This document shows, piece after piece, positions 5,421 through 49,628 of a stretch of DNA of 64,000 nt. Every line of letters begins with the position of its first letter. Position 1 is the stretch's first letter. The stretch lies in IMG/VR virus record IMGVR_UViG_3300040801_004034, positions 157,293-221,292 of that record. One strand, 5' to 3'. Made by a program: the position numbers and the translations under genes. Under the pieces are notes generated by a model. It had not been told where the DNA came from, did not search any database, and worked only from the letters and a program-made list of their open reading frames with translations.

Positions 5421-5815
5421 AGACTTTCAGTTCTATTTTCTTTTAAAACATCGATAAGTGTTCTGAATGATTTTCTTCCTGCTTCTTCAGCAGCTTCTTT
5501 ACTTTCAAACCCGAAATTGTACTTATCAGGGGGATATTGTTCTTTCTCAGATTCTGTTTCGTCTTTTACTGTATCGACTTTAAGGTATTTGAATGCCCAT
5601 TGAGCACCTGCTATAAATGCCTTGTGAGCTTCCGTGGTAAACATGTCACCATCTTCAACCTTATCCATGCCGTTTTCTTCGCTATACTCATCTATGCCAT
5701 AGCACATAGCGGTCCAATCATCAATAAAAAGATCTCCTTTTTTATAACACTCCTTACGACACTCTTCCCAGATTCGTATAAATCGTTCATCTGTAATTGG
5801 CTTCATATTTTCCAT
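5417..5815 (-). CDS. hypothetical protein
   Basis: ORF; TATAAT 6 nt upstream of ATG. Confidence 0.6.
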   Translation of the reverse strand: MENMKPITDERFIRIWEECRKECYKKGDLFIDDWTAMCYGIDEYSEENGMDKVEDGDMFTTEAHKAFIAGAQWAFKYLKVDTVKDETESEKEQYPPDKYNFGFESKEAAEEAGRKSFRTLIDVLKENRTESL

Positions 5816-5840
5816 AACTCTATTATAATATATTTTTATA

Positions 5841-6443
5841 TTATGTCCACATTTGCTTACGATTTCTGATAATCCAGCTCATGTAAAATTCTTCTTGTTT
5901 GTTTAGCTTTTCTTCAAGCTTATCATGGTGACTATAGCATTCTTCATATGAAAACTTAGATGGTTTCAATTTCTTTAATGATAGTTGATCGTCAATTTTA
6001 CATGGTTCATCTTCCCATTCAAGTGGTCCAGCTTTATTCGTTGCAGCTGTGAGTGCATCATCTATTTGTTTCTGTAATTTCGGTCGGCGAACCTTCACAA
6101 AATCATAACAATCTGTAAGTTCTTTTGCAAACTTCTTATGATCATCACAATCATCATATGCGACCCGTTCAAAACATTCTTCACCTTCTACGAAATGAAT
6201 AACACAACCGAATAAAAATTCCTCGATAAGATAATCTTTATCATGCCATTCATATTTCGGAATGTATGTTCGTACCCAACGTTGTGGTGACTTGAAGAAC
6301 TGCTTAATGTAATCAAGCCAGTTCATTCGATATCGGGGTAGAATGAATCCCCACACATCATCAACGAAGAAGTCGTAAACATCATATACGAATTTCGGAA
6401 GATTATACATCCTCCATTCCATTTTGAATTTAAAATCGTTCAT
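5841..6443 (-). CDS. hypothetical protein
   Basis: 200-aa ORF abutting neighbours; ends WIIRNRKQMWT. Confidence 0.65.
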   Translation of the reverse strand: MNDFKFKMEWRMYNLPKFVYDVYDFFVDDVWGFILPRYRMNWLDYIKQFFKSPQRWVRTYIPKYEWHDKDYLIEEFLFGCVIHFVEGEECFERVAYDDCDDHKKFAKELTDCYDFVKVRRPKLQKQIDDALTAATNKAGPLEWEDEPCKIDDQLSLKKLKPSKFSYEECYSHHDKLEEKLNKQEEFYMSWIIRNRKQMWT

Positions 6444-31898: not shown

Positions 31899-34179
31899 GT
31901 AGTTATTATATTATAGTTCCTCTAAACTAATACCAAGCCCCGCGCGCATATTAGAGCTCAATGAGCTTCTAATCCGCCTCTTAAGATTTTTGATAAGTTT
32001 TCGTATTTCATGTTTATTAGTGTGCGTATCCTCACACGCATTACAAGCCCTAAATGTGAGTTTTTCTCACTTTTTTCTGCGGGTATTTTGGCCGTTTCGG
32101 CGGCTCCTCGAACCAGACGCTTCTGGTCAATTCCGTTCGCTCGTGCCTCGCTCTCTCCATGCCAGAGCTATTTGTTCTGGAGAAAAGTTTCTTTGTATTC
32201 TCGCCACTCTTCCATCGCTTGAGAGATTAGCCGGATGACTGTGCCTACTTCACCGTCGGATTCGACCGCCTGCCAGACTCCTGGCCATGTCGGGTGGTCG
32301 ATGCGATGTATATCGAGCGTTGCCCATTCGCATGTAGAGCCTTGGCAGGTTCCACGCGATAGTTGAAATCCATTGAGTCGCAGTCCTTCTGCGATCATCT
32401 CCAGCTCACCCCACCCAGAACCAACCGGATGGATCAACCCCTTAGCCTCGGCCTTATCTTCCCAATATTGGTGTTCTTCATCACTCATGTTTTCTATATC
32501 TTCTATGTTCATTTGTCGGGGTTATCCTCCTCGGAGTTCTCAAGAATAGAAAACTCGCAGTAGTTGTTTTCTTGTCGACCTGTCTGTGTGAGCGAAAATC
32601 TAAACCCCTCCGGTTGTCGCAATCCCATTTTGTCGATCTCTACCCTAGCCAATCGAAACATCTTATTTCTCTTGCCGTTGTAACCAATTGCTGCAACTTC
32701 ATCGTCTCTAAACGATAGTCGGTATGTGGTCGTTTTTATGGTTTTTAATATCATAGTGTTGTCGGGTTTAGAACCAGCCGCCATACTCAATGCGAGGTAG
32801 GCCGCTGGATTTTCGTTAATATTTATCTACCTCTGAGCTGCTAGGCTCGCATCGAGTAGGCTCGATGATGTAATGACTTCATTATTCGATAGTATAATTG
32901 CTGCGTATTTCATATTATGAGAAGTTTATTTGGTTTTGATAGATTTCTGTATCACCTGGATCAGCTGCTAGACCTAGCGTTTCACTTTTTCCATAACATG
33001 TACCATCAATGCTGATGAATCCAGCTGATACCGGCTCTCTACGAACTCGGTGCCAATCACCATGCGTCTGGTTCTTAATAGCACCGAGCATCTCTGCCAT
33101 AGCATCATGATCAACACTTTTCGGAAATGTAAATATCTCAAGCTTATTATTATCAGGATTTTTTGTTTTGATGTATTTCATATTAAAAAACTTTAAAATT
33201 GCGAACCGCATATGCTACAAAGGCAATGCTAATACCGACTCCTACAATGAAGCCAAACCAAAAAGATCCGTTAAATATCCATTGTGATATTGTAATTTCC
33301 ATCTTATTCGTGTCCGTATAGTTCGATTAAAGATGTGCGAAGCTCATCAGCTGTTAGACCTTCTAGTGCTATTGAAATACCGGTCAGGAAACTCTTCTTA
33401 GTGAGGTCATCAATTGTCTTAGATGGTCCCATGTTATGTAATTTATGGTTTACTACATCAAGTAGCTTTTGTTGTTCATCTGTTAGCATATCTGTATTAT
33501 ATTATAGTTCCTATGACCTAGACCATTTTTGCTGACGAGTAAGCAAGCCATTGTGCTTAGCATTGCGCTTAATCATCTTGAGCTCTTGTTGCCCTTGCTC
33601 AAGTGTGATATCACCATCATGAATACGCTTCATAATTGCAGAACGTACTTCCATTGAATCAGCAATCTCACCACTACTATCAGCTTTGTTTAGTGCACTT
33701 CGCTTTCGTGATCTGGTTTCATCATTCATAATTCAGTTATTGTTATCTTATTAGTTACTATATATTTGACATTGACAGCAAACTTGCACTTACAGACGCA
33801 ATTGATTGTCATGTGATGTTCATCTGTAAACACATCACCATACTCGGTGCTATCAAAAGGTGTTAGAGCACTGTAATGATATTCGCATTGTGGACACTGA
33901 AAGTCATATTCATCTTTAACACGAGGACCGTATGTATTTGCATGCTCTTTGCTCTTGATTCCATCATACAACTTGTTCAGATTATCACTGAAGACAAACC
34001 GATCACATACAAAGAGGTTGTATTGTCGGATCTTAGATACCATCCAACCTGTATCAGGATCTTGCGGGTTGATATACCAGTCCTTGTTATCATTGAGCTC
34101 ATACACCCTGTACTTACCACGAGGTAACCATGATAGCGCACCATTACTATCCATCGGACATGCCATGAATCGTTTTAAC

Positions 34180-34473
34180 TCATTCATCTTTTAAAATATC
34201 TATGTTGTGGTGCATGATTACACTCAGTGATTTATTTGCAACTGTCCACCAACCACAGCACATCTGTTCATGAAGAGAATAATAACCAATGAACTCATCA
34301 TGAAGCATGTCATAGAACATCTTATCGAAGATTCTCTCAGCATGTTGTTCATTGCATGCATGAGGTGGTAATAAGCCCAGCTAGTTGCGCTTCTGCATCC
34401 GCTTTACAGATTTGCGTTTTACATCGATAATCGCTGGTAACCGGATAAACTCCTCATATGTCATTTCGTTCAT
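34180..34473 (-). pseudogene. hypothetical protein with in-frame TAG at 34381-34383
   Basis: 98 codons overlapping both neighbours; KRMQKRN*LGLLPPH... Confidence 0.55.
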
Positions 34474-35075
34474 AATACTTCTACATTATCATATGCATGA
34501 TAGACAATACCTGTTTCCTTTTCAGTAAATAGCAATTCAAGATTACCACAACTTAATTCCACCTTGTCCACCACAATTGTTCGTTCACCAGATTCATGTC
34601 TACTCCAGTGCCATCCCAGGTACCCACGAATAGCTTTACCTTCGAATGTGCTCTTTGCCCATGCAAGGTATGAATCACGCATTGCTTTATGCGCTGTCTC
34701 TTGTACTTGTTTAATGCTTACGTTCATGAGAAGATCTCCGTATCACCTTTCAAATCAAAGATTGTACCGCAATCAGAGCCCTGCGCGTATGATTCATGTC
34801 CATATTGAGCCCCGCCACAGTGGCGAGTCACCTTATAACCTTTCTGAGAGATACCAATAGTATATTCAGCATCATCACCACCTCTTGCGCGCTCATATTG
34901 GAGCATGGCAATAAACTCAGCCAACTCATATTTTGTCATCCGTGCACTGGTAACAGAGACGAATGGTTTAATCTTAGCTAGTCTTGGACCTGTTTTACTC
35001 ATATAACTAGTATATGGTAGTTCCTTAAACATGGAGAAACCTTCCATTTCTGAAAGGCCTTTCCGTAAAGCTAGT

Positions 35076-35438
35076 TTACATTACTGCTCTGCTTCTAATA
35101 AGAGCCTGGCTCATGAGCTTGCTCATGTGAGTTAGTGCTTTTTGAAGCTCTTCAGAGTCTATATTTCTCTCATCAATTGCCATCTCTGCTTCACCATGAA
35201 GTAGATCATAGAAGAACTGCTCTGGTTCTTCAGCAAGAGTCTTCATTAACTGAGCTGCAACAAGATCGAAATACTCTTCTTCAGGCGATATACTATCAGG
35301 CTCTGAGTAGCGCGGATCTCGAGGGTCATATTTCGGCTTACGTGCATTTTCCTGTGCTCGTAGTAAATCTGCTGGTGCATCTTCTAAACCACTGTAGGCT
35401 TCGTAAATTAGTTTGCTGTCATTGTTGATTGTGCTCAT
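35076..35438 (-). CDS. acidic late protein, possible internal head protein
   Basis: TAAATA at 35444-35449; N-terminus NDSKLIYEAY. Confidence 0.55.
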   Translation of the reverse strand: MSTINNDSKLIYEAYSGLEDAPADLLRAQENARKPKYDPRDPRYSEPDSISPEEEYFDLVAAQLMKTLAEEPEQFFYDLLHGEAEMAIDERNIDSEELQKALTHMSKLMSQALIRSRAVM

Positions 35439-35449
35439 AATATTATTTA

Positions 35450-35677
35450 ATGCGGGGTAGGGCGGGATCTGTATAATCTGCGAATAGCGGGGGTCTTAGT
35501 AATCTGCGAGGGATCTGCTCCCGGTTTTTTGTTTGGCATGCAGATATAACCCTAGTTCCAAAACGGCTCAGATAGTAAAGCGTTCCAACGGTTAACCTTC
35601 TCAGACCGGGTTCCTCTGAGCACAAAAGTTTCTCTAGTTCCAACCCACCTCTCGCTAGACCACTTTGGTTCTCTCTG
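35450..35677. other. GC-rich non-coding element with phased GTTCC and ATCTG/CAGAT motifs
   Basis: GTTCC at 35555, 35582, 35610, 35637 (27/28/27 bp); ATCTG x4 at 35467-35517 facing CAGA(T) x3. Confidence 0.5.
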
Positions 35678-35845
35678 CTACTTCCTCTTTCTATTCGCCT
35701 TACGCCTCCTTCGCTCGTTCTTATTCTTTCTTTTGTTGTTAGGCTTACCCACCTTAGGACTAAATGCATTCATCCATTTACTGTAGTCAGCATTAGCTCT
35801 AGCTAAGTCATGACCACTGAATGAAAATGTAGGCGCTCCGCTCAT
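35678..35845 (-). CDS. small protein with Arg/Lys-rich C-terminus (start revised)
   Basis: promoter at 35852-35867; ends KRKNKNERRRRKANRKRK. Confidence 0.6.
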   Translation of the reverse strand: MSGAPTFSFSGHDLARANADYSKWMNAFSPKVGKPNNKRKNKNERRRRKANRKRK

Positions 35846-38437
35846 GTTACTATTATATGTCTGTTCCATTACCTGATAGCAGCTTTGATATCACCTATAG
35901 TGTTTACACCTTGCTGTGAGTTATCAATAGCGATCACTTCTGTATCGTCTGGTAGTAAAGATGCAATTGGGTTAGTCCATCTCATTCCATTACTACGAAA
36001 AGCTACCTCTTCTACATTATCTGGATCGTTTTTAGTTGGCGCTTTGACTGCAAATGTTGTACTCATATGTATATTATATCAGAGTTCCATTACTTAGCTG
36101 GCGGCCATGTTAGGCCTGCCTCTTGTAGCTTAGGTACATCTTCGTCAGCAATATCGAACTCATCCTGAGTAGTGTAGTTAGCTTGTTGATGCTCTCCTAA
36201 TGTGTCGAAGACCATCTGCTCTGGAATGAACCACCCATAGTCATTACTACTACCTTTAAAGTACACCCTGACCATATTACGGTCATTGATATGATTGACT
36301 GATGCGCTCTTATGCTCTGTGATTTGTATTACCATAATTATCCGATCATGCTTGATGCTCTACACTCTTTGCTTCCTGGACCTGCTTCTGGCGCAGGACA
36401 AACTCTTCTACCTCGTCAGCTCTGATGCTGTACGTCGGTATGTGACGATCATGAAACTCCACTCGATAGAACTCACCTTGTGTGGTTGTTAGCGTGACTT
36501 CTTTTAGCTCGATTGTATTTGCTTTGCTCATGTCGATATTATATCAAGGTTCCATCACAGCATCGGATTGTGCGGAACGTCATTATCTTCTTCCTCACAA
36601 ATCTCGTGATAGGCACATCCTCTTAGTACGCTATTAGCTTTGTACCGAACTGTACCGGTGAATGCTTCTCGCTTTTCCTTCTTGAGTCCAGCTGCTCGAA
36701 CGTATCGTTCAGCTTGCTCCCGGGTGTTAAATGTCGCAACTATCTCTTCTTGTTCTTCAGTCTTGAACTGACCTCCGATATGTGAAAGAAAAACGTGCTC
36801 TGTTATACCTATTAGCTTTACCATGTAATTATTATATCGTGGTTCCGTGAGTGCTAATAAACCGCTACCATACGGTGGCTGAACATTGCAGAGAGCTCTC
36901 TCAGATTGAGTGGCTTCTCAGCGATCGTCAAGAACGCATAACCTTCCAGCTCTTCCTGAACCTCTTCTAAATAAACCTCATCACCTTCCCAATCACCTGA
37001 CTCATCATTGAACGTCACGCGCTCAAACGTCATCAAATTGCTATTGCGATCGAGCGTCATGTCGATGTCTTCGTTCTCGCCTAGGTGCACAAACACCATC
37101 ATATCGTTGCTGCGCATTGCTGGTAATTCATTTTTCATATTCATAACAATATTATATGATGGTTCCAATACGGCTATCCGATCAGTCCGACTGCGTTTGC
37201 AATCATCACTGCTACAAGCACGACAATACCGAACAGTACAACTTTTGCTATTGTTTTGAAGCTCCAACTATTATTTGGTCCAATCATTTTATTTCCCTTT
37301 GTTTTTGTTATTTGTTTATGCAGCAGTCTCTTCTACTAACTGCTCTCCATGAAAGCGTCGTGCCCACACCTCTTTGATATGCTCTTTCTGCTCTCTTGTA
37401 GATGAAAGGGATACGTACTGCAATCGTAGCAGGCGCTTGTAACCGCTAAGGTCTTCTACGATGTTGCCATCACCATCGTGCTGCTTTTCATGACGAACCA
37501 GACCTCGGCCCTTCTTCGAAACATACTCAGCGAGGAACTTCTCGTAACTGTTGTCGTATTTCTTCTCAATCAAGCCAGCTAGATACTTGTGATGGAATGC
37601 ATTTTCCTCACCGGTAACAGTGCACTTGACTTTGACCGTGCAGTTAAAAGCTTGCTTACCATCAGCAAACTCGTAGTTGTATAATTTTTTAGCTTTCTTT
37701 TCCATAATGTTAAACGTCAATTGCAAAGTACATCACCATCGCTGCATAGGCTGCAACTACTGTAATGACTGCTATGTGAATGATTAAATGTTTCATACTG
37801 ATATTATATCGAGGTTCCGAAAAGGTACTCATCATATGCTGCCTCATCAGAAGCTTCATATTCTGCTTTATGTAGTGCAATTTCATAATCTGCTTCATCT
37901 CGCAGAAATTGCGCTGCTTCAGCTGCTTGCCATGTATCAATATATTGATCGCGATCGTGTTCTTCTAGATGTGCCATACCAATATTATATCAGAGTTCCT
38001 AGAGGGAGTTACGTTTAATGCATCCTGCTTGGTACTGAAGACGATCTGTATCTTTCAACCAATTCGCAACGAATGTCTTGAGAGGGTACTCAGCATACAA
38101 TCCATCTTTCCTTCCGCCGATGTGATGAAAGCCATAATGAGCATTCACATCAATACCTTCGCTGGTAAGAAAGTCAAGATGGGTTCCGAGATCCCATTCC
38201 GGATGAATCAGAGTGCTTTGAGCTACCGAAACTTTTGCTAAATCGAATGTCTGTATTTGCGTTTTTATCATACCAATATTATATCAGGGTTCCGAGATGT
38301 GATTAGCACCATACTAGCTGTTCAGCATCAACATCTAGCTTACGAAGATACTCTTCACGTGCATATCGTTCCTGACGAGCCTTCACTTTACGATCGCGCT
38401 CTTCTTGAGCTAGTCGACGAGCTTCCTTCATCCTTAG

Positions 38438-38486
38438 CAACTTGCTCGTTACAAGTAACGAGCAAGTTGAACAACTTGCTCGTTAC
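38438..38486. repeat. 15-bp inverted triplication X-X'-X
   Basis: CAACTTGCTCGTTAC aa GTAACGAGCAAGTTG aa CAACTTGCTCGTTAC. Confidence 0.9.
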
Positions 38487-40161
38487 CAACAATGATCTCA
38501 GCTGCAAGTTCCTCATCGAGCGTCTTCAACCATGCTCGGAACTCCTCGCAATCTTCCTTTGATGTCTTAACGACAGCCCATGCATCGTTAAAGTCAACAC
38601 TCTTATCGAACTTTACGATATGACCAGGGCTGCAACCGCATGAACATCCAGCATTGCGTGAGTAATGAATACTCTTCACATCAGAAAGAATTTCCTTGAT
38701 TGCTGCATTAACTGCACGATTGCACTTGCGAAGAACTTTGTTCCAAGTCTTGCACTTAAAGTCTAGATTATAAATCTTCTTTTCATTGAACCAATCATCT
38801 GCGATCGTCATCACACTTTCTTCCTCTTTAGGTGTCTCAGTGTAGATGACCGCTCGGGTGCTGTGTGAAGGAGCCCAACCATTGCGGCTCTTTGACATCA
38901 TTTTGTTTCGAATTTCTGCTGTGGTGTTATTTTTCATACCAATATTATATCAGGGTTCCAATACGGCGATCAACCTGCGTCCCAACCATATGGCTTGCAA
39001 AGGAACGGCTTACCATCTACATCAACCAGATCACCTACTGATACGCTATACAGAGGACCATCATCAGCTCGGAACTTTTCTTCGAAGCGAGCTTCTTCGC
39101 TGTCCATGTCCATAAAATCACGTGGCTTGTTTGTAGCTGTGAACACCCACTCAGCAGCCTTTTCCTGCTCGACCACTCCGTCTGGAAGATCATACTCAAA
39201 TACTAAGTGGCGAGTTAGGTTATCGAGCTCCTCATCGGTTGCTCCAAATGCTTGGCGTGTGTCGGTTGGTCGGTATAATTTAATTTTCATACTGCGATTA
39301 TATCAGGGTTCCGAGATGTGGCTAGAGTCGAATCTTGATCATCTGTTCCAACCAAGCATGGACCTCTTCAATAGTGTCAGCATCTTCTGCACCTTCAACA
39401 TGATCCATAAACACATCCTCATACCATGTCTCAAAGCTTCCGCTCATCAACAGATTGTAAACGCCTTTTGCAACTTCTTCTGTGGTGTGTGTATCTTTCA
39501 TATTGATATTATATCGAGGTTCCTAGAAGTGATAGAGCGTTGAGCTCTTGTTGTCCTTATCGATGCAATTCGTATGCCAATTGTGCATGTAAGCTGGGGT
39601 ATACTTCTTGCGATGCTCATCGTATTTGTCTTTGCGGCAAATACGCACCTTACCGTAGAAAGTTCCTAGAGCGCCATACCCGCGATCCTTTTGCGTGACT
39701 TTTGTCTTGAACTGTTTGCGATTCTCTTTAAGCCAATCAGTAGCTTCCTTTCTACTCTCAAAGCCAAGATCGTACATGAGGTAGTTCGTATTGCGTCCAG
39801 TGATGCCTTCTGCATAGGCATTTGTATAAGTCATCCAAATAATATATTTCATACAATTATTATATCAGGGTTCCGTGAGGGCTACACACCTGGCAGCTCG
39901 AACTTCACATACCAGTGTGATTGATTTGCGAGCGATGCTCCTCCTCGGAACGGCTTCCATTTATCGCCGGTAGCAAGAATGATTGCTTCTGGGAAAGCTT
40001 TCCTTACTTTCTCCTCGAGCATCTCTGATGTGTACCCATTTCGGTAAAAGTAACCTTTGCGTACTGTAAAGATGCCTTTGCTCTTGCTGACGTGGTTTCC
40101 GATCTTTTCTTCGACTTGACGTGATGTAATTTTCATATGGTTATTATATCGAGGTTCCATG

Positions 40162-40671
40162 CTAGATGTTGTGGATGATCTTACCTGCAATTTTGATCTT
40201 GCGAAGTGATGATATTTTGTAATCACGTTCTGGTATTTCCTTCTCGATGCCTACTGCTTGCTGAGTAGCTGTTGGTGCTGCTTTAGGCAAGAATGGCTTT
40301 AGTTCCGCTAGAGGAATCTCAACTCCAGTCTCCTTATCGATGTAATAAGTTTTGCCGTTCAGCTGTTGAGGCTTGACGCTCAAGTATTGCTCACCTTTAT
40401 GATGAATGATGAAGCGATGTTCCTCATCACGAACACCCCAACGACGAGGCTTAGCTTTGAAAATAGCTTCCTTCCCCTCACGTTCGAGCTGACGATTAAC
40501 GCCTGCTTCGTAGTTAGTTCCGATCAAGCCGCCAACGAATGCAACCTTGATGACGCGTCCAAAGTATGGATTGTTCGTCTTGTTCATGCGAGGCTCGGTA
40601 TGAGCTTCGAATGAGATTGGTGTAGTGCCATTATTGGCATTTTCGATGATGTGGTGTACGATGTTTTTCAT
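40162..40671 (-). CDS. hypothetical early protein
   Basis: 169-aa ORF with own promoter at 40678-40693. Confidence 0.7.
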   Translation of the reverse strand: MKNIVHHIIENANNGTTPISFEAHTEPRMNKTNNPYFGRVIKVAFVGGLIGTNYEAGVNRQLEREGKEAIFKAKPRRWGVRDEEHRFIIHHKGEQYLSVKPQQLNGKTYYIDKETGVEIPLAELKPFLPKAAPTATQQAVGIEKEIPERDYKISSLRKIKIAGKIIHNI

Positions 40672-40912
40672 AATCAGATTATATCTAGGTTCCTAGACGT
40701 CCAGTCTGTATGCTGTAACTACTAGATCATCGATCTCACTCTCTTTCTGAGCAATTTGCTTCTCTAAATAAGCTAGTGCATCATCAGGTGCATCCTTATT
40801 CATCGCAAGTGTATGATAATATTCATGCAAGATGCTCAATTGTGCCTCAGCATGCTCCAATTTTTGTAGTGGTGTCTTTTCCATACCAACATTATATCTA
40901 GGTTCCAAGACA

Positions 40913-40948
40913 TGAAAGGACTCGAGCCACACCACATAACTCGAGTCC
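40913..40948 (-). terminator. probable intrinsic terminator
   Basis: GGACTCGAG-13nt-CTCGAGTCC followed by TTTCA on the minus strand. Confidence 0.5.
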
Positions 40949-42163
40949 CGACCCCCTTGGGTCAACCACCTTTTGCCAACCACGGCACATGAAAATTATT
41001 CTTCCGGTTCCTTAAAAATTTCGTCTTGCTCTCCTGGCAAAAGACCAGTCATAAGAAATTCTCGCTCAGTTGCATTGAGCATCGGAAAGGCTTCCTGAAT
41101 CATCATGCCGTCTTTCCATTTTTTGTTGCACTCGAGAAACTCTTGCGAGCTAATATTGAGATGCATCTCATTTGTTTTGCCTGTCAGTGGATTGGTTTTT
41201 GTGATCTTCATAATGTTATTATATTACTGTTCCGTTTCAGCAAGACGCTCGTTATATTTTGCAAGAATATGATCTTCAACCCTCTTGTATGAACCCCAGC
41301 AACTTGATGGCACATGATTGTAGATGAATACAATGAGCTTTCTGAGCTCATCACTCTCTTGAGGACAATTATCATATCGTCCGTAAGCACCGAAGAGATC
41401 ATTTGCAAGTACTGCATTGATAAACCCTCCTGGCTCATAACCATTCTCGATATAGTCCATCATCGTCTGAGCAAACCGTTTCGGACACTTGTTGTAATCT
41501 ATTTCAAACATATATTATTTTATCAGGGTTCCGTCACCTAAACGTTGTTCGGTCCAGTACCAACTCGATCAGATACTTTATCGAGATAGTCATAAAGGAA
41601 TTCAATTTGCGCTAATCGAGCGAGATCCATATTGTTATCGAGATTCGCTTCGCGTTCGAAACTGTTGAGTTGTTCCTCGAGAGCTTCAAACATATATGTC
41701 ATATGCATCTGACGCTCATCAGTTGACATTTGTTTGTACTTTGTAGTGTATTTAATTTTCTGTGCTTGATTCATACTACGATTATATCAGGGTTCCGAAA
41801 TTAGAACTCCTTCTTAAAGCTGATGCATGTGACTGTTTGGCCGCGCATCCATCGAGCGGAACGATTGATCTCATGATCATATACCTCGAATGTATAAAGC
41901 TCGAATGCTTTGGTGAGCATGTCTTTGATCATGCGCTTTGCTGCATCATCGTAGTTACAATTCGTTTTGATGCGAACTGTTCCGTCTTTGCGTACATCTC
42001 GGAAATAATTTCCTGGTGTAACAGTGCGTGTTGACGCGATTAATACTCGAATGTCTCTAATGGTTGGTGCTGTAATCATACTATTATTATAAGAAGGTTC
42101 CAAGAATGGAAAGCTGCCAGCTCTTTCGAACTGACAGCCCAAGTCGTTTCCGCCCTCCATTCA

Positions 42164-42676
42164 CTAACCGAAATGCGCTGTCAATACTTTGTTCATGCAT
42201 ACTCGAAGTTCCTTCAAGTCAGCAATCAGCGCATCTCGTGAGTAAAGTTCCAATACCTTCACTACATCATGCTTGTACGAATCAAGCTTGCTTACTAGCG
42301 TAGGTTTGTCTTTGATAAAATCGTAGTAGTCACCATCAGCTTTGACTGTTCCGTCTCTCTCGTTGATAGCATACTCCATGTAATTACAGACCTCTTTGTC
42401 ATAACCAAGTACTTCACAAACGGTGTAAATTCGCATGCGATGACTCAGATCGCAATCACCGGTAACAAGTTCCTTAGCAAGGTTGTAACCGGAACGTTTT
42501 GTTGGCCAAGGACCATCTTTTACATATTTAAATGCTCCTTCTTCAACTTCCAAATTGTTCCAGAACTTCCAATGATCGTATGGGTAAGTATTCTCCCATG
42601 CCCCATCGGAGAGCTGCCCGAGAATCTCATGTTCGAAAAGAGCTTTGAGCCGTTTTGGTAATGTCAATATATTCAT
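42164..42676 (-). CDS. hypothetical early protein
   Basis: 170-aa ORF; promoter at 42712-42727. Confidence 0.7.
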   Translation of the reverse strand: MNILTLPKRLKALFEHEILGQLSDGAWENTYPYDHWKFWNNLEVEEGAFKYVKDGPWPTKRSGYNLAKELVTGDCDLSHRMRIYTVCEVLGYDKEVCNYMEYAINERDGTVKADGDYYDFIKDKPTLVSKLDSYKHDVVKVLELYSRDALIADLKELRVCMNKVLTAHFG

Positions 42677-42950
42677 AATGTGTGCGGTTGTTATTGCTTA
42701 ATTGCAACTATATTATAAAAGGGTTCCGTTCTGGCTAACCCCTAAATTGATGCAAGTAGCACGATACCTAAACCGATTGCGAGGCCGATTAGCCAGCTAC
42801 CTAGCAAGGCACCTATGCAAGTTAAAAAGGCGACAAATGCGAGAGCGTTTGGATTAATATTCATAATGTGTTCCGTGTTCTAGATAATGTTTAATTGTTC
42901 CTGCTTCCTCTTCATCGATGCAGTGACTGATTAAAGGATCTATAATCATT

Positions 42951-43064
42951 TGTTCAATACAGGAACGTTCCTGTTCCAGTTCCGTGGCGGCGGCTATTAC
43001 CCTTACTGCCGCCGCCACTTGTTCTATCTGTTCCTGTTCCACTAAACGTTCCAGTTCCAGTTCC
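42951..43064. repeat. cluster of 8 GGAAC boxes flanking an 11-bp GC hairpin
   Basis: minus strand GGAACT GGAACT GGAACG..GGAACA GGAACA..GTGGCGGCGGC-13nt-GCCGCCGCCAC GGAACT GGAACA GGAACGTTCCTGT. Confidence 0.85.
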
Positions 43065-43425
43065 TACACTCGTTGTGGATCGAAAATATGGAACACTGTC
43101 ACTTGTGTGTTCCGCATAATATCACTCACATTATACTTCGGGTCATCTTTCAAGGAACTGATGCCAAACCCTCGCAGGTATTGAGAGATTGCCAATGTGT
43201 GGCCAGCTGTAACAACTGCACTGACATTCAATCGTGATAGTTCCTCTACTACCTTCTCGAGGATCGATAACGGAACAACCTTCTCGATCTTAATACGATA
43301 CCGACCATCTTGATGACGATCATTATAATGAGTAACACAAGTCAAATCGACTCCATGTTTCTCAATTGCATTGCGAACTTCTTTATATGTGATGTTTTTC
43401 ATATCGATATTATAAAAGGGTTCCA

Positions 43426-43950
43426 TTACGCTGCAATCAGCTCTCTAACAATCAGCTTGCCGAGAGTTTCATGCTTCTTTCCGATCATGTACCGATCTCT
43501 GTTGATCTTGTTGAGCTGGAACCCTTTTGGTATGCGAGCTTTTTTCGCATAGATGACTCCTGTTTCAACATTCATGATAGCATATAAGAGCTTTTTACGA
43601 CTGCGAGCAACAACATGTTCTGTAATATCTGTTTTGCCATTTGCAAGACGTGTAGGAGATGCTCCAATTTCTCTACAGATGCGCTTCCAACGATAGTCAT
43701 GCCTGCAGCATTCACCATGACGATGATAAGCAAGTGCGTGAGCGATCTCATGCAGCATCGTATCGAGAACCTCTTCCTCTTTACCAACACGGCACAATGT
43801 TTGATTGATTGCGAGAGTGCGATCGCGGTAGCGGCATTGACCGTATGTACGATAAGCACTCTTCTTTAGCAACCGCGGGCGCCATCCATGTTTGTCGAGG
43901 CCGTGCTGCTCAATTAACTTTCTGTACGTTGTTAGTGGTGTCATCATCAT
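43426..43950 (-). CDS. SprT-like zinc metalloprotease (start revised)
   Basis: YGQC, DTMLHEIAHA, HDYRWKRICREIGA; promoter at 43957-43972. Confidence 0.85.
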   Translation of the reverse strand: MMMTPLTTYRKLIEQHGLDKHGWRPRLLKKSAYRTYGQCRYRDRTLAINQTLCRVGKEEEVLDTMLHEIAHALAYHRHGECCRHDYRWKRICREIGASPTRLANGKTDITEHVVARSRKKLLYAIMNVETGVIYAKKARIPKGFQLNKINRDRYMIGKKHETLGKLIVRELIAA

Positions 43951-43996
43951 ACTACGATTATATCTGGGTTCCAAAAAGGCAAAACCATTTAAGATC

Positions 43997-44157
43997 ATCG
44001 CAAATCTCTATAGAGGCGAGCCGCTAAGCTCGGGTTTTAACCCCTCAGTATCAGTAGGTCGATGCAGTCACCTATCATCAGCTTTAATTTAAAGACGAGC
44101 TGGTTCGATTGCGTCTCCATCCGCGTTTAGGGTCTGTGATGGGTTCGACCTTGCGAT
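43997..44157 (-). ncRNA. candidate 161-nt structured ncRNA with own early promoter
   Basis: promoter 44163-44178 not followed by ATG; 5' ATCGCAA pairs with 3' TTGCGAT; internal stems AGGTCGA/TCGACCT, CCATC/GATGG, AGACG/CGTCT, GAGG/CCTC, CGAGC/GCTCG. Confidence 0.7.
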
Positions 44158-44423
44158 AAATTATTGTATCAGTGTTCCTATTCAACAACTGCTTCAATGC
44201 CATGATCAACTGCTTCACTGACCTTAACACCATTACGCATATGGTTAAGAGCAATCTGCTGCGCTTTGTTCATCTGTGTTAGTGTTAGCACAACAGCAAA
44301 GTCATTGCGTGCAACTTGTTCAATTGTCTGTAGGCTGGCGTCTCTAATTTTCATACGGTTATTATATTGTGGTTCCATGCACATATTTAATGTGAACAAC
44401 CGATTAAATATGCATCCATAATA

Positions 44424-44681
44424 TTATCGATTAGTTGCGAAGCGAGGAACAAAGCAGTTCTCAACCACTCCAGTTCGGCGGTTCATGTTTGTGACAATAC
44501 CACAAATGTCATGCATAAATTCAACTCGTGGAGCTTCATGTAAACGCTCCCAATTCATTCCCATATCATCTGCATTGAGCAGATCCATGACAAGTGTCAT
44601 GCGGTCAATTTTGATGCCCATCTCGGTGAATTCATCTTCAGCGCGATCAGCTACTTTGGTCATTATTTCTAGTGGTCTCAT
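44424..44681 (-). CDS. DUF6874-like small phage protein
   Basis: MDL...FMHDICGI...NCFVPRFA. Confidence 0.55.
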   Translation of the reverse strand: MRPLEIMTKVADRAEDEFTEMGIKIDRMTLVMDLLNADDMGMNWERLHEAPRVEFMHDICGIVTNMNRRTGVVENCFVPRFATNR

Positions 44682-45829
44682 ACTCAGATTATAAGAAGGT
44701 TCCTACCTGTGCTTGACTGCTAATGTAACACTTGCATGATAGTTACAAGGCATGACCTGTACGCTATGTACATTAACTGGCTCGGAAAGTTCCATCCATT
44801 GCTGTAATGCTGGAACTAAATCTTCATTTGGATCATCCCATGTACCTGTATTGATATCAAAGCTGATGTTCACGCTTCTAATTTCGCGATTAGGCTTAGG
44901 TAGTTCTATTTCCTTACCTTGTTCAAAGCGAAGACCATAGCATGATTGCGAAGCAAGAGCAATTGCGATGTCAGCAACATGACCTTTAAATGTTCCAAGC
45001 TGCTTAGTAGTGCGACCTTCACAGTCACCTTCTGTTGTAACCTTCCATATACCTTCTGGAGGACCGACAGTGTCTTGCATTTTGTTCCAGATATCACGCT
45101 GTCGTTCGACAGCACTATCTCGGCGTTTAAGTTCCTGAGCTAGCTGCTCAGATGTAAATTGTTTAAGGCTATCCATATTAGCCTACGATCTTATATTCGT
45201 CGCGCATGCTATCTGCTAATGACATCTTGACCGACTTAAGAGTGATGCCCGGAACTTTGCATAGTGCATATTCTTCACGTGCACGTTCGGTCACAAGCTT
45301 GTTAAATTCTTTCTGTGTGATGGTTGTTTTCATAAGTGGTATGTTAAGAGGGTTCCATTATGGCTCTTTACGAAGAGATGGATGACATGTCTCATTAAAG
45401 CCTTCAAACCATGCAGCATTTTCGAGCTCATTTTGTTCGACCTTCTTAGTCATCTCTGGTGTATCATGTCTTCTATGACCTAAACGAAATGGTCCACCTG
45501 GTGTGTAATCCCAGTTCTCAGAACCATCAAACTTAAGACCGGTCAGGCGACCATCTTTGTATGCTTTAATGTTTGATTTCATGTCGCTATGTTAAGAGGG
45601 TTCCAAGATTAATCATCACCGAATAAGTTGTCATTGTCCCATTGATCACAAGCACGAACTAGATCAGTGATGACCTGCTCACGACCAACATTGAATGCGA
45701 AGCGAATGAATGTTAAACACCCATGATCATATACACCTGGTATGTTCCGGCCGCGTGCTTCAGCGAGTGATTCGATTGCTTGTTCGTATGTGATTGTTTT
45801 CATGCCTCTAGTATAGAGAGGTTCCAATC

Positions 45830-47050
45830 CAGCTCAGAACGGAACAGTGATATAATATGTGTACAGCCAGATCGTGTCGTGAGCGAAATGCAGAGCCCGA
45901 GGGGTTGGCGAGAACTCCCTTGAGATATGGACCTGCTCCATCTCGGAAAAAAGGAACTGTGATATAATTGATGTGCTCCACCTACCTGCCTAACAAGGAT
46001 TGCCGGGATGGAAGGAGCAGAGATCTAGAGCTAGAGAGCAAACTACTCACCCTAGAGCGGAAAAGACCGGATGGGTTGCTAATGAAGAGTTTATAGGCCC
46101 CCACGCCTAGGCGGATCCAAACGGTCCAGCTATGCTTCTCTATAGAAATCCAGCTAAAAATGCTGGTAATGCGCCAGGTGCATAGGGAGTTAGAAGATTC
46201 TAACTTCAGGGTCGCCCGTCCGGATTCTCGCCCGGGTGAATTTACGCCCGTTTTGCCGCTCTGTAACTCGTTGAGAGGGTATGAGTTTACAGCCGATCCT
46301 GGCACGTAGTTCTGGAACCATGATATACTAGTGTTTTAATTTAACAGTGAGATAGCAGCCATGTAATAGATACACATAATAATATACGTAGACGTGCATA
46401 TGAAGCGCTATATATGAAGCGCTTAGGGCTCTCCGAGAGCCACGTAAGGATATATACGTGGGGTAATAATAAATGCCCGGGATAGCCAGGACGAATCTGC
46501 TATTGCAAGCGGGCTCAACTTGTGCGTATAGCTAGAAAGGAACACCTGCGCGGGAGATCGCGAGAGAAAGTGCGGGAGAGATAGCGCGCAGTGCGATAAG
46601 AGAGCGAGCGCGGGTGGGAGGGAGAAAATTTGAGCGGGAGACCTAACCAAATACCCGCTTAGATTCTATCATTTCCGTGCCCTCATATACCTCTCCTCAC
46701 ATAACCCTCTTGACTTTTCATACCTTGCTTAGCCTCTCCTCTAGGCTATTGCTCACATCAACAACAACCCTGCATCCATCATTAGTAGATATTACATTCA
46801 CACTTATATGTTCATCCTCTATCTCCACACCATGATTTTTCATCATGCTCTTTACCCTCTCTTTTATACCGCTTTTAAAATTATCATCTACCATTTTATT
46901 ACTCTTTCTATTAGTATTGTTATTGATGTTACTATTTCTAATATTACTCTTTCTATTGTTATTAGTATTGTTGTTATTAATACCCTGCGGGTGGGCTCAT
47001 TTCCTTCACTGGTGAGATATCGGGCTGTATACTAATGCCATTCCAGTTCC
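45830..47050. other. 1.2-kb non-coding region: candidate origin or genome-terminus region
   Basis: three plus-strand GGAAC promoters (45841, 45953, 46314); ATATGAAGCGCT x2; G/purine-rich GCGGGAGA repeats switching to a pyrimidine-rich tract near 46650; AT-rich ATTACTCTTTCTATT x2. Confidence 0.5.
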
Positions 47051-49628
47051 AAAAATACTTCCACACATCTTTCTCTTTTCTACACCATATCAATACCATA
47101 ATTATACTTCAGTTCCTTTTTGTATACACCATCCACACACCATCTCTTTTACTCAATGAAACACATTCAAACAACATCTTACCATTCACAATTTCATATG
47201 GTACGCCAGCTACAATAAGTATTGCACATACTTCATCCTCAGTCAAGTCACAAACATATTCCTTTTTACATGCTTGTTCACACATATTTAAAATGCTTTT
47301 AATATCATCAATCTTCATTATATTACCCAGATAATCTTTTTGTTTTAATTAAACCATTTGTATCTCTATAAACCATGAACCGGTGTGTTACAACAATACC
47401 AAATCTCACACTATTATACACTCTATATGATCCACACTTAGTCTGTGTGAAATCAAATTCAGCAATTGCATGCTTTGGTACAATAATTAGTCTCTTGTTA
47501 TCATCTCTATAATGGTATTCATCTGTGTATTCCACCACATGCTCTGATTTTGGATTACATAACCCCCAGTGACGCAAGTTACCTATGAATACATTTTGTG
47601 TTTGTATCCAGTGGTCTTGACCAATAATCTTAATCTTTACAGTCAGCTTGTGTACATCTTTACGCTGAACTTCATAGAACCTGTGTTTAAAAAATTGTTT
47701 GATCTTATTCATCCACCGGAACATAATATGTTTCAACTACTGTGCGGGTGCGCTGCTCTACCACCTTGGCACCATCCAATATTTCGCACGGCATAACACA
47801 ATCATACCAATCATTATCACCATCTGCATGTACCTGGTAAAAGCTCACGAACACATCACATAACTTAGCAACCTTTGGTGTGATTGAATACCATCTATGA
47901 TTATCTGTCTCACCATTAGTCACTGATTCAGTTTCAAACATCAGCATAGATGCTAGACCCTCATCACTACACACTTCATTTTCTAATTCAAAATGTTTCT
48001 TTATCAGTTCTCTTATATTCATAATTGTATTATACCTCTGTTCCTTTTTCCTCAATATGCTTCTTCACTATCCACAGATCATCACCTATTTGTCTTAACC
48101 ATTAACTCTTATGTGCTTACTATTATTTTCCAGTATTTCTACCATGTATCTTCATTACTTCGCGGAAGCTCCTCTGTCTAATTCTCTTGTTCTACTATAC
48201 TCTCTCATGGAACCCCTGGTGGGAACAGCTATTATTCATCAACCCATAGCAAAATATCGATGATACACATGATACACACATAAAACCAAATAATAATATA
48301 TATCCAACCTTCTACTAAATTAATAGTAGGATCATCTGAGATGAAGTCAGGTTTTGAATAACATAACAATACCATTACAGCAAGTGTATAAAGAATATTA
48401 GTTTTCATAATTAACCTAACGTACAACTTAACCCGATAAGGAACCATCCGATAATACCTAACATATACACTGTCCCAGCAGCGCTATCATCTGCATCGCT
48501 CAGTGGTTTTTTATCAAGCAATGATGATAATGAGATTGTAACATGAAATGTTAGTGCCCAAATCAGAAGGGGTATAAAATTGATTATATCCATCACTTAT
48601 TATAAGGTTGTTCCTTCTTACATTCACTTGCTGGTACTACTTTTCTGAATCTCTACATATAATATATATGCTACAATTTCGTTCATAGTGTTGGGAGCTC
48701 CCATCCATCCTCGTTCATGATGTCGGCGGCTTCTTTGGCACCGGCTTGTGAGGTGAATAATGATGTAAGATCTTGTGAAAGAATATGGGGACCAGCACAC
48801 CGGAGGCGGTGGCGGGAATCGAACCAGATGGAATACCGAGAGTAAGTTGCTTCATGCTTCGCATTCATCTCCATAGCCAGCGAGTAGTATCGCTGGTAGA
48901 AGGTGAAGAACTTGGAAGCTTGTTCGGCAGCATTTCGGGTTGGGAAGGTTCTACCAGCTCTTGGGTGATGAGGGCGGTCGCCAGCACTGTGACAGATCCA
49001 ACCATTATAGGTAACTGTATACATACCACCTTTCGGATCCCATGGTGTGACCGGATCAGGTGTTTCTTTAATAATCCTGTTAATTTGAGCTTTAACTGAA
49101 GCAATACGTTCAGTCTGACGAGCAGACTCTTTTGTAAGTTCACCTAGCTGTTCTAATAGTACTTTCATTTCATCTTTCATAATTAATAATTCCTTTCACA
49201 ACCATTAAAGATTATATTGTTACAATCTTGGTTTTCATGCTCTACTTGATTGTATGCATAGTGTTCTTCATCACCATTTTTGTATTGAGCCTCTATTGAG
49301 ACACTCATTTCTGTCCCATCATCATACTCGACCGTGAAATGATATGAATATTCATCTTCTCTATTTTTCATCTTGTGTAAAATATACAAATTCTGTTATT
49401 GGTTTATTGGTATCCTCATCAATTATTAATATCCAATCACCTAAACCTTGCTCGAAATGTTCGTTTTTAATTTCATTACGGATATATTCATCCATTGCTA
49501 CTGTATACATTATAACAGCAATAACCATAATCGGAAGCGATCCCATCTGTGTGCTTTCTGCACCAGCACATGCTAAGATAACAAAGAATATCATACTAAA
49601 AATAAAAAGAAATAACATCATAACAACA

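What the first reader, a model, noticed from the sequence alone, without database searches (positions are those of the whole stretch)
42951..43064. Eight GGAAC boxes at 6-bp period around a perfect GC hairpin, with no -10: decoy or loading site?
Seen: the promoter's GGAAC element is multimerised (3+2 | hairpin GTGGCGGCGGC/GCCGCCGCCAC | 3) and ends in the palindrome ACAGGAACGTTCCTGT. Inference: a high-avidity site for the GGAAC-binding factor (sponge, enhancer, recombination or packaging/entry signal) or an RNA decoy. It supports GGAAC being a discrete protein-recognition element.
Basis: partly seen in the sequence, partly recalled or inferred. Interest (0 to 1): 0.6.

Follow-up and report, generated by a model that had tools for sequence, protein, structure and literature searches.

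The report
Promoter-box array around a GC hairpin
In an uncultured T4-like phage, a 114-base non-coding spacer between two small genes holds eight copies of the early promoters' GGAAC box around a strong GC hairpin, with no working -10; it most resembles the decayed promoter/stem-loop junctions already described in T4-type phages, and a binding function is not excluded.

Summary
There are eight GGAAC on the minus (sense) strand and one on the plus strand in 42959-43064. They flank a perfect 11-bp GC hairpin and end in a 16-bp palindrome. All five tandem GGAACNGGAAC of the 221-kb genome lie here.

The stretch is open in frame but does not look coding. Its codon score lies below every real-gene window, and none of 20,000 synonymous recodings of the peptide reaches eight boxes. 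The 31-codon gene that starts at ATG 42949 scores as normal coding.

GGAAC is the upstream box of a genome-wide promoter class, GGAAC-N5-TATAAT-N6-ATG, which looks leaderless. About half of these promoters follow a stem-loop. The element keeps that layout in two places. Box 1 overlaps gene A's TAG, as in seven true cassettes. Box 8 lies 12 nt after the hairpin and 22 nt before the ATG. The -10 slots, however, are dead (CTGGAA, TGTATT), and the hairpin has no U-tract.

My best reading is a degenerate PeSL-like promoter/stem-loop junction whose boxes multiplied by slippage. A functional binding array or an RNA element is not excluded. No homologue of the flanking genes exists anywhere, so the conservation test could not be run. 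Interest is moderate to low.

The parts
43403..43424 (-). Bona fide cassette promoter of gene A: GGAAC (43424-43420), N5, TATAAT (43414-43409), N6, then the ATG at 43402.
   Evidence: The geometry matches 35 of 55 strict sites, which have an ORF ATG 6 nt after the hexamer.
43064..43402 (-). Gene A, 112 aa, an ORFan. Its stop TAG (43066-43064) shares its G with box 1.
   Evidence: It matches only itself among 5.8e9 proteins and 1.84e9 proteins. Pfam gives only a sub-threshold PASTA match and PHROGs nothing. The TAGGAAC junction is also seen at 7 true promoters.
43048..43064 (-). Left box run 1: GGAACT GGAACT GGAAC (boxes 1-3). It is part of direct repeat D2, copy 1 (43064-43045).
43030..43040 (-). 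Left box run 2: GGAACA GGAAC (boxes 4-5), followed by GATAGAACAA, which may be decayed copies.
   Evidence: family D1.
42984..43018 (.). Perfect 11-bp GC hairpin, GTGGCGGCGGC / GCCGCCGCCAC, with a 13-nt loop. No T/U run follows it on the sense strand.
   Evidence: I1; -25.3 kcal/mol alone. It is not called as a terminator, but that scan allows loops of 3-8 nt only and this loop is 13 nt, so the absence of a call is no test; the missing T/U run was read directly from the sequence.
42967..42983 (-). Right box run: GGAACT GGAACA GGAAC (boxes 6-8). It is part of direct repeat D2, copy 2 (42983-42964). Box 8 lies 12 nt after the stem and 22 nt before the ATG.
42959..42974 (.). 16-bp palindrome ACAGGAACGTTCCTGT. 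Its half pairs with 43045-43055 (outer inverted repeat I2) in the predicted RNA fold.
42950..42961 (-). Dead -10 slot TGTATT (42961-42956) plus the 6-nt spacer GAACAA before the ATG.
   Evidence: The weight-matrix score is -11.6, against 5.3 or more for true sites.
42854..42949 (-). Small gene B', 31 aa, from ATG 42949 to TAA 42856-42854. Its codon usage is normal.
   Evidence: in-frame score 0.30 (genes average 0.34), off-frames -0.88 and -1.10. No family match.
42742..42864 (-). Gene C, a 40-aa hydrophobic peptide. Its start overlaps the end of B' by 11 nt, and it has no promoter of its own.
   Evidence: score 0.135.
42706..42727 (-). The next bona fide promoter (GGAACCCTTTTATAAT), which closes the A-B'-C unit.

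Best explanation
The 114 nt between gene A's stop codon and the ATG at 42949 are non-coding. I read them as a degenerate composite promoter/stem-loop junction of the kind that separates gene cassettes in hyperplastic regions of T4-type phages (PeSL-like).

In this phage a normal junction reads: stop codon, often a stem-loop, about 10 nt of T-rich spacer, then GGAAC-N5-TATAAT-N6-ATG. The element contains two such junction slots. Box 1 overlaps the TAG. Box 8 follows the stem-loop and precedes the ATG at the canonical distance.

In both slots the -10 hexamer and the T-rich spacer have been overwritten by further copies of the box. I infer that this happened by replication or recombination slippage: hexamer runs, a 20-nt direct repeat, and (GGC)3/(GCC)3 arms.

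Inferred consequences: no initiation occurs here, and the hairpin without a U-tract does not terminate efficiently. B' and C are therefore expressed from read-through of gene A's promoter, on an RNA carrying a very stable nested hairpin between the cistrons.

Shown: the anatomy, the non-coding character, the dead -10, the promoter class, and stem-loop-plus-promoter as a common layout. Inferred: the origin by slippage, read-through, and whether the boxes still bind the factor.
For: - Non-coding. The codon log-odds of the 38 in-frame codons is -0.23. For 151 windows of real cassette genes the mean is 0.337, sd 0.131, minimum 0.02. The region uses GCC x3 (4% of Ala codons), GCG x2 and CTG x3. No synonymous recoding out of 20,000 gives 8 boxes (mean 1.3, maximum 6). 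The codon log10 probability is -24.3, against -17.65 +/- 0.99 in simulations.
- Promoter class. There are 69 sites. In 35 of 55 strict sites an ORF ATG lies exactly 6 nt after TATAAT, and in 7 the upstream TAG overlaps the box as box 1 does.
- Stem-loop plus promoter is common. 32 of 67 promoters have a fold of -10 kcal/mol or stronger within 55 nt upstream, against 15% of background. The neighbouring cassettes at 42101 and 40906 have stem-loops of -24 kcal/mol about 10 nt before the box; the value here is -25.3.
- Dead -10 slots.
- Slippage-like make-up.
- Published precedent: degraded PeSLs with the upstream box and stem-loop but no -10, and multiple mis-spaced copies attributed to recombinational slippage, next to ORFans in hyperplastic regions (PMC4122927).
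- The flanking genes are ORFans, and the region has a distinct GC content and codon usage.
Against: - All eight boxes are perfect, the stem is perfect and the palindrome is perfect. A relic drifting in an AT-rich genome should show decay.
- GGAAC is avoided elsewhere (o/e 0.65). Stray boxes therefore seem to carry a cost, and an eight-box array should be purged unless it is tolerated or useful.
- All boxes keep the sense orientation on both sides of the hairpin.
- A related phage also has a box-dense non-coding region.
- The defining PeSL evidence, indels between closely related phage pairs, could not be tested. The only other copies are 100% identical.
- There are no transcript data.
Confidence: 0.42

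Rival explanations
1. A functional DNA array. The boxes form a high-avidity site for whatever recognises GGAAC at -22 to -18 of the early promoters (a host RNA polymerase/sigma surface or an unknown phage factor). It would act as a sink, or as a local recruiter that compensates for the weak -10 in front of B'-C.
For: The copies are perfect, their orientation is uniform and the array is unique in the genome. GGAAC is avoided elsewhere. A box-dense ORF-poor region exists in the related contigs G001/G002, with 14 boxes in 411 nt against 0.6 expected. Box 8 sits in canonical register with the ATG.
Against: A 6-bp spacing puts neighbouring boxes on nearly opposite faces of the helix and too close for simultaneous occupancy (inference). 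No candidate factor was found: no ECF-type region 4, no MotA, and only a weak sigma region-2 match at genome 77.9 kb. None of the five related contigs has a tandem GGAACNGGAAC. No binding data exist.
Confidence: 0.25
2. An RNA-level element on the A-B'-C transcript. A nested hairpin (outer 9-11 bp, inner 11 bp GC) would act as a 3'-end stabiliser, a processing site or an attenuator. Alternatively it would display single-stranded GGA(AC) repeats as a decoy for an RNA-binding protein, in the manner of CsrB.
For: The fold is -44.2 kcal/mol with z = -5.4 and no shuffle folds as well. The outer inverted repeat I2 encloses I1. The boxes fall in the unpaired parts of the fold. All boxes lie on the transcribed strand.
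Against: No Rfam family matches; the best hit scores 25 bits against a gathering score of 65. There is no U-tract. The phage has no CsrA and no convincing RegA. There are no RNA runs. That the motif is identical to the DNA promoter box would be a coincidence under this reading.
Confidence: 0.15
3. Coding sequence. The stretch would be the N-terminal half of a 62-aa (GTG 43042) acidic helical protein, or a read-through extension of gene A past its in-frame TAG. The boxes would then be GAA-CTG / GAA-CAG codon pairs.
For: The frame is open from the TAG to the ATG, and a gene caller annotated the 62-aa ORF. The GTG lies exactly 22 nt after box 1. Ala tracts alone can yield an 11-bp stem in 4% of recodings.
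Against: Codon usage lies outside the range of all real-gene windows. A second frame is equally open, because the repeats contain no stop codons. There is no -10 for a leaderless GTG start. TAG serves as an ordinary stop in 13 of 47 cassettes. No homologue or family was found.
Confidence: 0.08
4. A cis site for DNA transactions: a packaging (pac-like) site, a replication origin or a site-specific recombination site made of short repeats flanking a cruciform.
For: The layout of 5 boxes | hairpin | 3 boxes recalls the P1 pac site, which has hexamer repeats on both sides of the cut (from my own knowledge, not tested). The element occurs once in the genome.
Against: T4-type phages package by headful without a strong pac site (established knowledge). 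Only contigs are available, and they show no termini, joints or variants. No AT-rich unwinding element lies next to it.
Confidence: 0.07

Closest known systems
PeSL / degraded ('half') PeSL elements of T4-type phages (Arbiol et al. 2010, PMC2839356; Comeau, Arbiol & Krisch 2014, PMC4122927)
   Same: It is a short composite of a stem-loop plus an early promoter, lying between ORFan cassettes in a hyperplastic region. The degraded forms described keep the upstream promoter box and the stem-loop but have no -10, or carry multiple mis-spaced copies ascribed to recombinational slippage.
   Different: The promoter here is not a sigma-70 -35/-10 pair but GGAAC-N5-TATAAT. The box is reiterated eight times in perfect copies on both sides of the stem. 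The stem has no T-run. No pair of close relatives is available to show an associated indel.
Rho-independent (intrinsic) terminator
   Same: It is a GC-rich hairpin immediately after a stop codon. True hairpin-plus-T-run terminators precede other promoters in this genome.
   Different: No U-tract follows on the sense strand, and the loop is 13 nt. The scan does not call it, but that scan accepts loops of 3-8 nt only, so this is no independent test.
ECF sigma-factor promoters (-35 GGAAC)
   Same: The same pentamer serves as the upstream promoter element (from my own knowledge).
   Different: The box lies 5 nt, not 16-17 nt, from a TATAAT-type -10. No ECF-type region 4 is encoded by the phage.
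CsrB/RsmZ-type sponge RNAs
   Same: Many GGA-containing repeats lie in the unpaired parts of a structured RNA.
   Different: The phage has no CsrA, no Rfam family matches, and the motif is identical to the DNA promoter box.

Membership tests
PeSL-like promoter/stem-loop junction | Lies between variable ORFan cassettes in a hyperplastic region of a T4-type genome | tested here: met
   The phage has a T4-type portal, gp15 and ligase. The region at 32-48 kb consists of about 40 small cassettes. Genes A, B' and C have no homologues.
PeSL-like promoter/stem-loop junction | A stem-loop directly upstream of an early promoter, recurring at many junctions | tested here: met
   32 of 67 promoters have a fold of -10 kcal/mol or stronger within 55 nt upstream, against 15% of background. 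The stem here (-25.3) lies 12 nt before box 8.
PeSL-like promoter/stem-loop junction | A functional promoter with both the upstream element and the -10 | tested here: not met
   The -10 slots read CTGGAA and TGTATT. Weight-matrix scores are -11.6 to -28, against 5.3 or more for true sites. It therefore fits only as a 'degraded' PeSL.
PeSL-like promoter/stem-loop junction | Association with indels or exchanges between closely related phages | not testable with these tools
   The only other copies are 100% identical. The related contigs lack the locus.
Intrinsic terminator | A GC-rich stem followed by a U-tract | tested here: not met
   The stem is followed by GGAACUGGAAC. The scan does not call it, but it accepts loops of 3-8 nt only and this loop is 13 nt.
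Protein-coding sequence | Codon usage like the genome's genes, and homologues that conserve the peptide | tested here: not met
   codon usage; no homologue or family.
ECF-type promoter | GGAAC at -35 with a spacer of about 16-17 nt to the -10, and a cognate sigma | tested here: not met
   The spacer is 5 nt to TATAAT. No Sigma70_r4_2 domain is found.
Protein-titrating DNA array or sponge RNA | Demonstrated binding of a factor to the repeats | not testable with these tools
   No binding or expression data exist. No candidate factor was found.

The most novel reading that the evidence does not exclude
The array is a selected cis-regulatory device of a previously undescribed transcription system. 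It would be a cluster of eight early-promoter boxes that titrates or recruits the GGAAC-recognising factor. That would tune the early programme, or gate expression of the small membrane peptide downstream, in a T4-like lineage that runs almost entirely on leaderless, one-promoter-per-gene transcription.
Probability: 0.2. Interest if true: 0.7.

Novelty: new variant of a known kind. Interest (0 to 1): 0.35.

Why it matters
The element itself is a local curiosity. It probably records how promoter cassettes slip and recombine in the hyperplastic regions of T4-type phages. Its main value is as supporting evidence that GGAAC is a separable recognition unit of an undescribed promoter class (GGAAC-N5-TATAAT-N6-ATG). 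It is also a ready-made probe: eight boxes with no -10, suitable for pulling down whatever binds that box. The wider context is the more interesting lead: a divergent T4-like lineage from a microbial mat in which most genes appear to have their own promoter and leaderless mRNAs.

Tried and rejected
- Homology route, all empty. Megablast and tblastn of the locus, gene A and ORF B against 50,697 phage records found nothing. Peptide-pattern scans of IMG/VR found nothing. The word search of 5.8e9 proteins with ORF B and with gene A returned only the query itself. Full HMMER of gene A against 1.84e9 representatives returned only itself.
- The encoding contigs are the same phage at 100% identity.
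- The exact pattern GGAACNGGAACNGGAACGTT in IMG/VR gave 12 unrelated chance or coding hits, none in a contig carrying the promoter motif.
- Five related contigs that use the same promoter class have no tandem GGAACNGGAAC and no homologue of gene A or of the 170-aa neighbour.
- Sequencing runs: only DNA contigs from one microbial-mat sample, with no RNA, variants, joints or termini.
- Rfam: nothing above threshold; the CcsR1 hit at 25 of 65 bits was rejected as a hairpin artefact.
- Standard sigma-70 promoter scan and terminator scan: not above the shuffled controls, and nothing called at the element. For the hairpin this terminator scan is uninformative, because its loop limit is 3-8 nt.
- Candidate factors: no ECF region 4, MotA, CsrA or convincing RegA.
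- The palindrome GGAACGTTCC also occurs in G001. One copy is inside a gene (EEERS), so it was not treated as conserved.
- TAG read-through or an alternative genetic code was rejected: TAG is a normal stop in this genome.
- A sigma-54-like -24/-12 reading of GGAAC-N5-TATA was rejected, because it would place the transcription start after the ATG.

Full report
**Context.** The window is bases 157,293-221,292 of a 221,292-bp IMG/VR virus record. The record comes from a microbial-mat metagenome. It encodes a T4-type portal, gp15 and an ATP-dependent ligase. Its portal is only about 31-33% identical to that of any cultured phage, so this is a divergent T4-like myovirus. Genes around the finding lie on the minus strand.

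**The observation.** GGAAC starts on the minus strand at 43064, 43058, 43052, 43040, 43034, 42983, 42977 and 42971, and on the plus strand at 42962. The perfect 11-bp inverted repeat GTGGCGGCGGC / GCCGCCGCCAC lies at 42984-42994 / 43008-43018, with 13 nt between the arms. The 16-bp palindrome ACAGGAACGTTCCTGT is at 42959-42974.

One is a 20-nt direct repeat, GGAACTGGAAC[T/A]GGAACGTT, at 43064-43045 and 42983-42964, 95% identical. The other is an outer inverted repeat, 42959-69 / 43045-55. In the predicted RNA this outer repeat closes a second helix around the GC hairpin. The fold is -44.2 kcal/mol, z = -5.4, and none of 200 shuffles folds as well.

The cluster is far beyond chance. All five tandem GGAACNGGAAC of the genome are here. 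P(>=8 boxes in 114 nt) is about 3e-7 at the local density. The hairpin is the most GC-rich perfect inverted repeat of 10 bp or more in the genome.

**What GGAAC is in this genome.** Aligning all minus-strand GGAAC sites and then scanning the genome shows a promoter-like motif, GGAAC-N5-TATAAT. There are 55 strict sites and 69 relaxed ones, always oriented with the genes. In 35 of the 55 strict sites an ORF of at least 30 codons starts with an ATG exactly 6 nt after the hexamer. That is where transcription would be expected to start, so these look like leaderless cassettes.

The window's 32-48 kb stretch is packed with about 40 such small cassettes. It also has a higher GC content (0.42 against 0.35) and a different codon usage. 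Outside this region GGAAC is among the five most under-represented pentamers (o/e 0.65-0.67). The same motif recurs many times in related IMG/VR contigs, which share about 65-72% nucleotide identity in structural genes. GGAAC is therefore a real, discrete promoter element of this lineage. What recognises it is unknown. The phage shows no ECF-type region 4 and no MotA, only a weak sigma region-2 match that may be the late sigma.

**Coding or not.** The 114 nt are open in frame from gene A's TAG (43066-43064) to the ATG at 42949. A gene caller annotated a 62-aa ORF from GTG 43042. A second frame is equally open, because the repeats contain no stop codons.

Scored with the codon usage of the surrounding cassette genes, the 38 codons give -0.23. 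That is below all 151 real-gene windows (mean 0.337, sd 0.131, minimum 0.02). The 31 codons from ATG 42949 score 0.30, with strongly negative off-frames.

If coding, the stretch would use GCC three times (4% of Ala codons), GCG twice and CTG three times. I drew 20,000 synonymous recodings of the same peptide from local codon usage. None reached eight boxes (mean 1.3, maximum 6). The observed codon choice is 6.7 sd less likely than average. Ala tracts alone can give an 11-bp stem in about 4% of recodings, so the stem by itself is weaker evidence.

I conclude that the nucleotide features are not by-products of an EQEQ/ELE peptide and that the stretch is most likely non-coding. ORF B and gene A match only themselves among 5.8e9 proteins. 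Gene A also matches only itself in a full HMMER search of 1.84e9 representatives. Phage records and IMG/VR give nothing.

**Anatomy relative to normal junctions.** In seven true cassettes the upstream gene's TAG overlaps the promoter box (TAGGAAC), exactly as box 1 does here. About half of the true promoters (32 of 67, against 15% of background) are preceded within 55 nt by a stem-loop of -10 kcal/mol or stronger. The two neighbouring cassettes, at 42101 and 40906, have stem-loops of -24 kcal/mol that end about 10 nt before the box and are followed by a T-rich spacer.

Here the hairpin (-25.3 kcal/mol) ends 12 nt before box 8. Box 8 lies 22 nt before the ATG of B', which is the canonical geometry GGAAC-N5-hexamer-N6-ATG. 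Two things are wrong, however. The hexamer is TGTATT, and the T-rich spacer is replaced by two more boxes. Behind box 1 the hexamer slot reads CTGGAA, and the start slot holds GTG 43042. A weight matrix from the 55 true promoters scores the slot behind the eight boxes at -11.6 to -28, against 5.3 or more for true sites.

**Interpretation.** The layout matches the composite promoter/stem-loop elements (PeSLs) described between ORFan cassettes in hyperplastic regions of T4-type phages. It matches in particular the 'degraded' forms that keep the upstream box and the stem-loop but have no -10, or that carry several mis-spaced copies attributed to recombinational slippage (Comeau, Arbiol & Krisch 2014, PMC4122927).

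The element is built almost wholly from short tandem units: (GGAACN)3, (GGAACA)2, (GGC)3, (GCC)3 and (GGAACN)3, plus the 20-nt direct repeat. That is what slippage would produce.

I therefore take it to be a promoter-dead, terminator-less junction. B' and the overlapping 40-aa hydrophobic peptide C would then depend on read-through from gene A's promoter at 43424, on an RNA carrying a very stable hairpin between the cistrons. These last steps are inference.

**Why function is not excluded.** All eight boxes, the stem and the palindrome are perfect. The boxes keep one orientation on both sides of the hairpin. GGAAC is avoided elsewhere in the genome. The related phage G001/G002 has an ORF-poor 411-nt region with 14 boxes on both strands, where 0.6 are expected.

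Two observations count against a simple avidity array. A 6-bp spacing places neighbouring boxes on nearly opposite helical faces (inference). None of the five related contigs has tandem boxes.

An RNA-level role (stabiliser, processing site, decoy) fits the strong fold. It has no other support: no Rfam family matches, the phage has no CsrA or convincing RegA, and no RNA runs exist. Contigs from four runs of one sample are identical, with no variants, joints or termini. The pac, origin and polymorphism ideas therefore could not be tested.

**Verdict.** GGAAC as a discrete recognition element is supported. Specific functions such as sponge, enhancer, packaging signal or decoy are unsupported but not refuted. 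The closest known kind is a degraded PeSL-like junction, which makes this a new variant of a known kind. Interest in the element itself is moderate to low. The phage-wide leaderless promoter architecture noted in passing is the more valuable lead.

Noticed in passing
Whole genome G000; e.g. window 2866, 19843, 35438 (late type) and 36088-44703 (GGAAC type): Almost no gene has a Shine-Dalgarno sequence. Start codons sit 5-7 nt after a -10-like element of one of three kinds: GGAAC-N5-TATAAT, TATAAT alone, or a T4-late-like (T)TAAATAAT in structural genes. This implies one promoter per gene and leaderless mRNAs across the phage.
   Followed up: partly
Window 35555-35641 (minus), within the ORF-poor stretch 35440-35690: Four GGAAC boxes lie at 27-28-nt spacing upstream of GGAAC-N5-TTATAT-N4-ATG. 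This is a second multi-box arrangement, with a different period.
   Followed up: partly
Window 45825 (minus) and 45841, 45953, 46314 (plus): One minus-strand and three plus-strand GGAAC-N5-TATAAT promoters are arranged back to back. The plus-strand ones have no ATG at the leaderless position, so they may drive non-coding or antisense RNAs.
   Followed up: no
L031 (G001) 2250-2660, identical in G002 at about 5680-6090: A related phage has an ORF-poor 411-nt region with 14 GGAAC/GTTCC boxes (7 per strand; 0.6 expected). It includes GGAACGTTCC and the repeated unit CCGAGCCTTTCCGAAC.
   Followed up: partly
Window 43090-43113, in the 3' end of gene A: There is an inverted pair GGAACAC-N10-GTGTTCC just upstream of the element. 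CGGAACAC also precedes the ATG of gene C (42874) and recurs in the G001 box-dense region.
   Followed up: no
Window 42850-42864 and 42662-42676: The starts of gene C and of the 170-aa gene share the 15-mer ACACATTATGAATAT, which suggests a past exchange or a common start context.
   Followed up: no
Window 32000-48000 versus the rest of the genome: The cassette region has GC 0.42 against 0.35. Its codon preferences are shifted: CTC 23% against 8%, CGC 33% against 7%, GAG 46% against 22%. TAG stops are common (11 of 26). It may have a different origin or expression regime.
   Followed up: partly
Genome 134-141 kb (outside the window): Several plus-strand GGAAC promoters directly follow sequences that look like tRNA 3' ends (GGTTCAAATCC and similar). 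This suggests a tRNA cluster interleaved with cassettes. It was not verified with ARAGORN.
   Followed up: no
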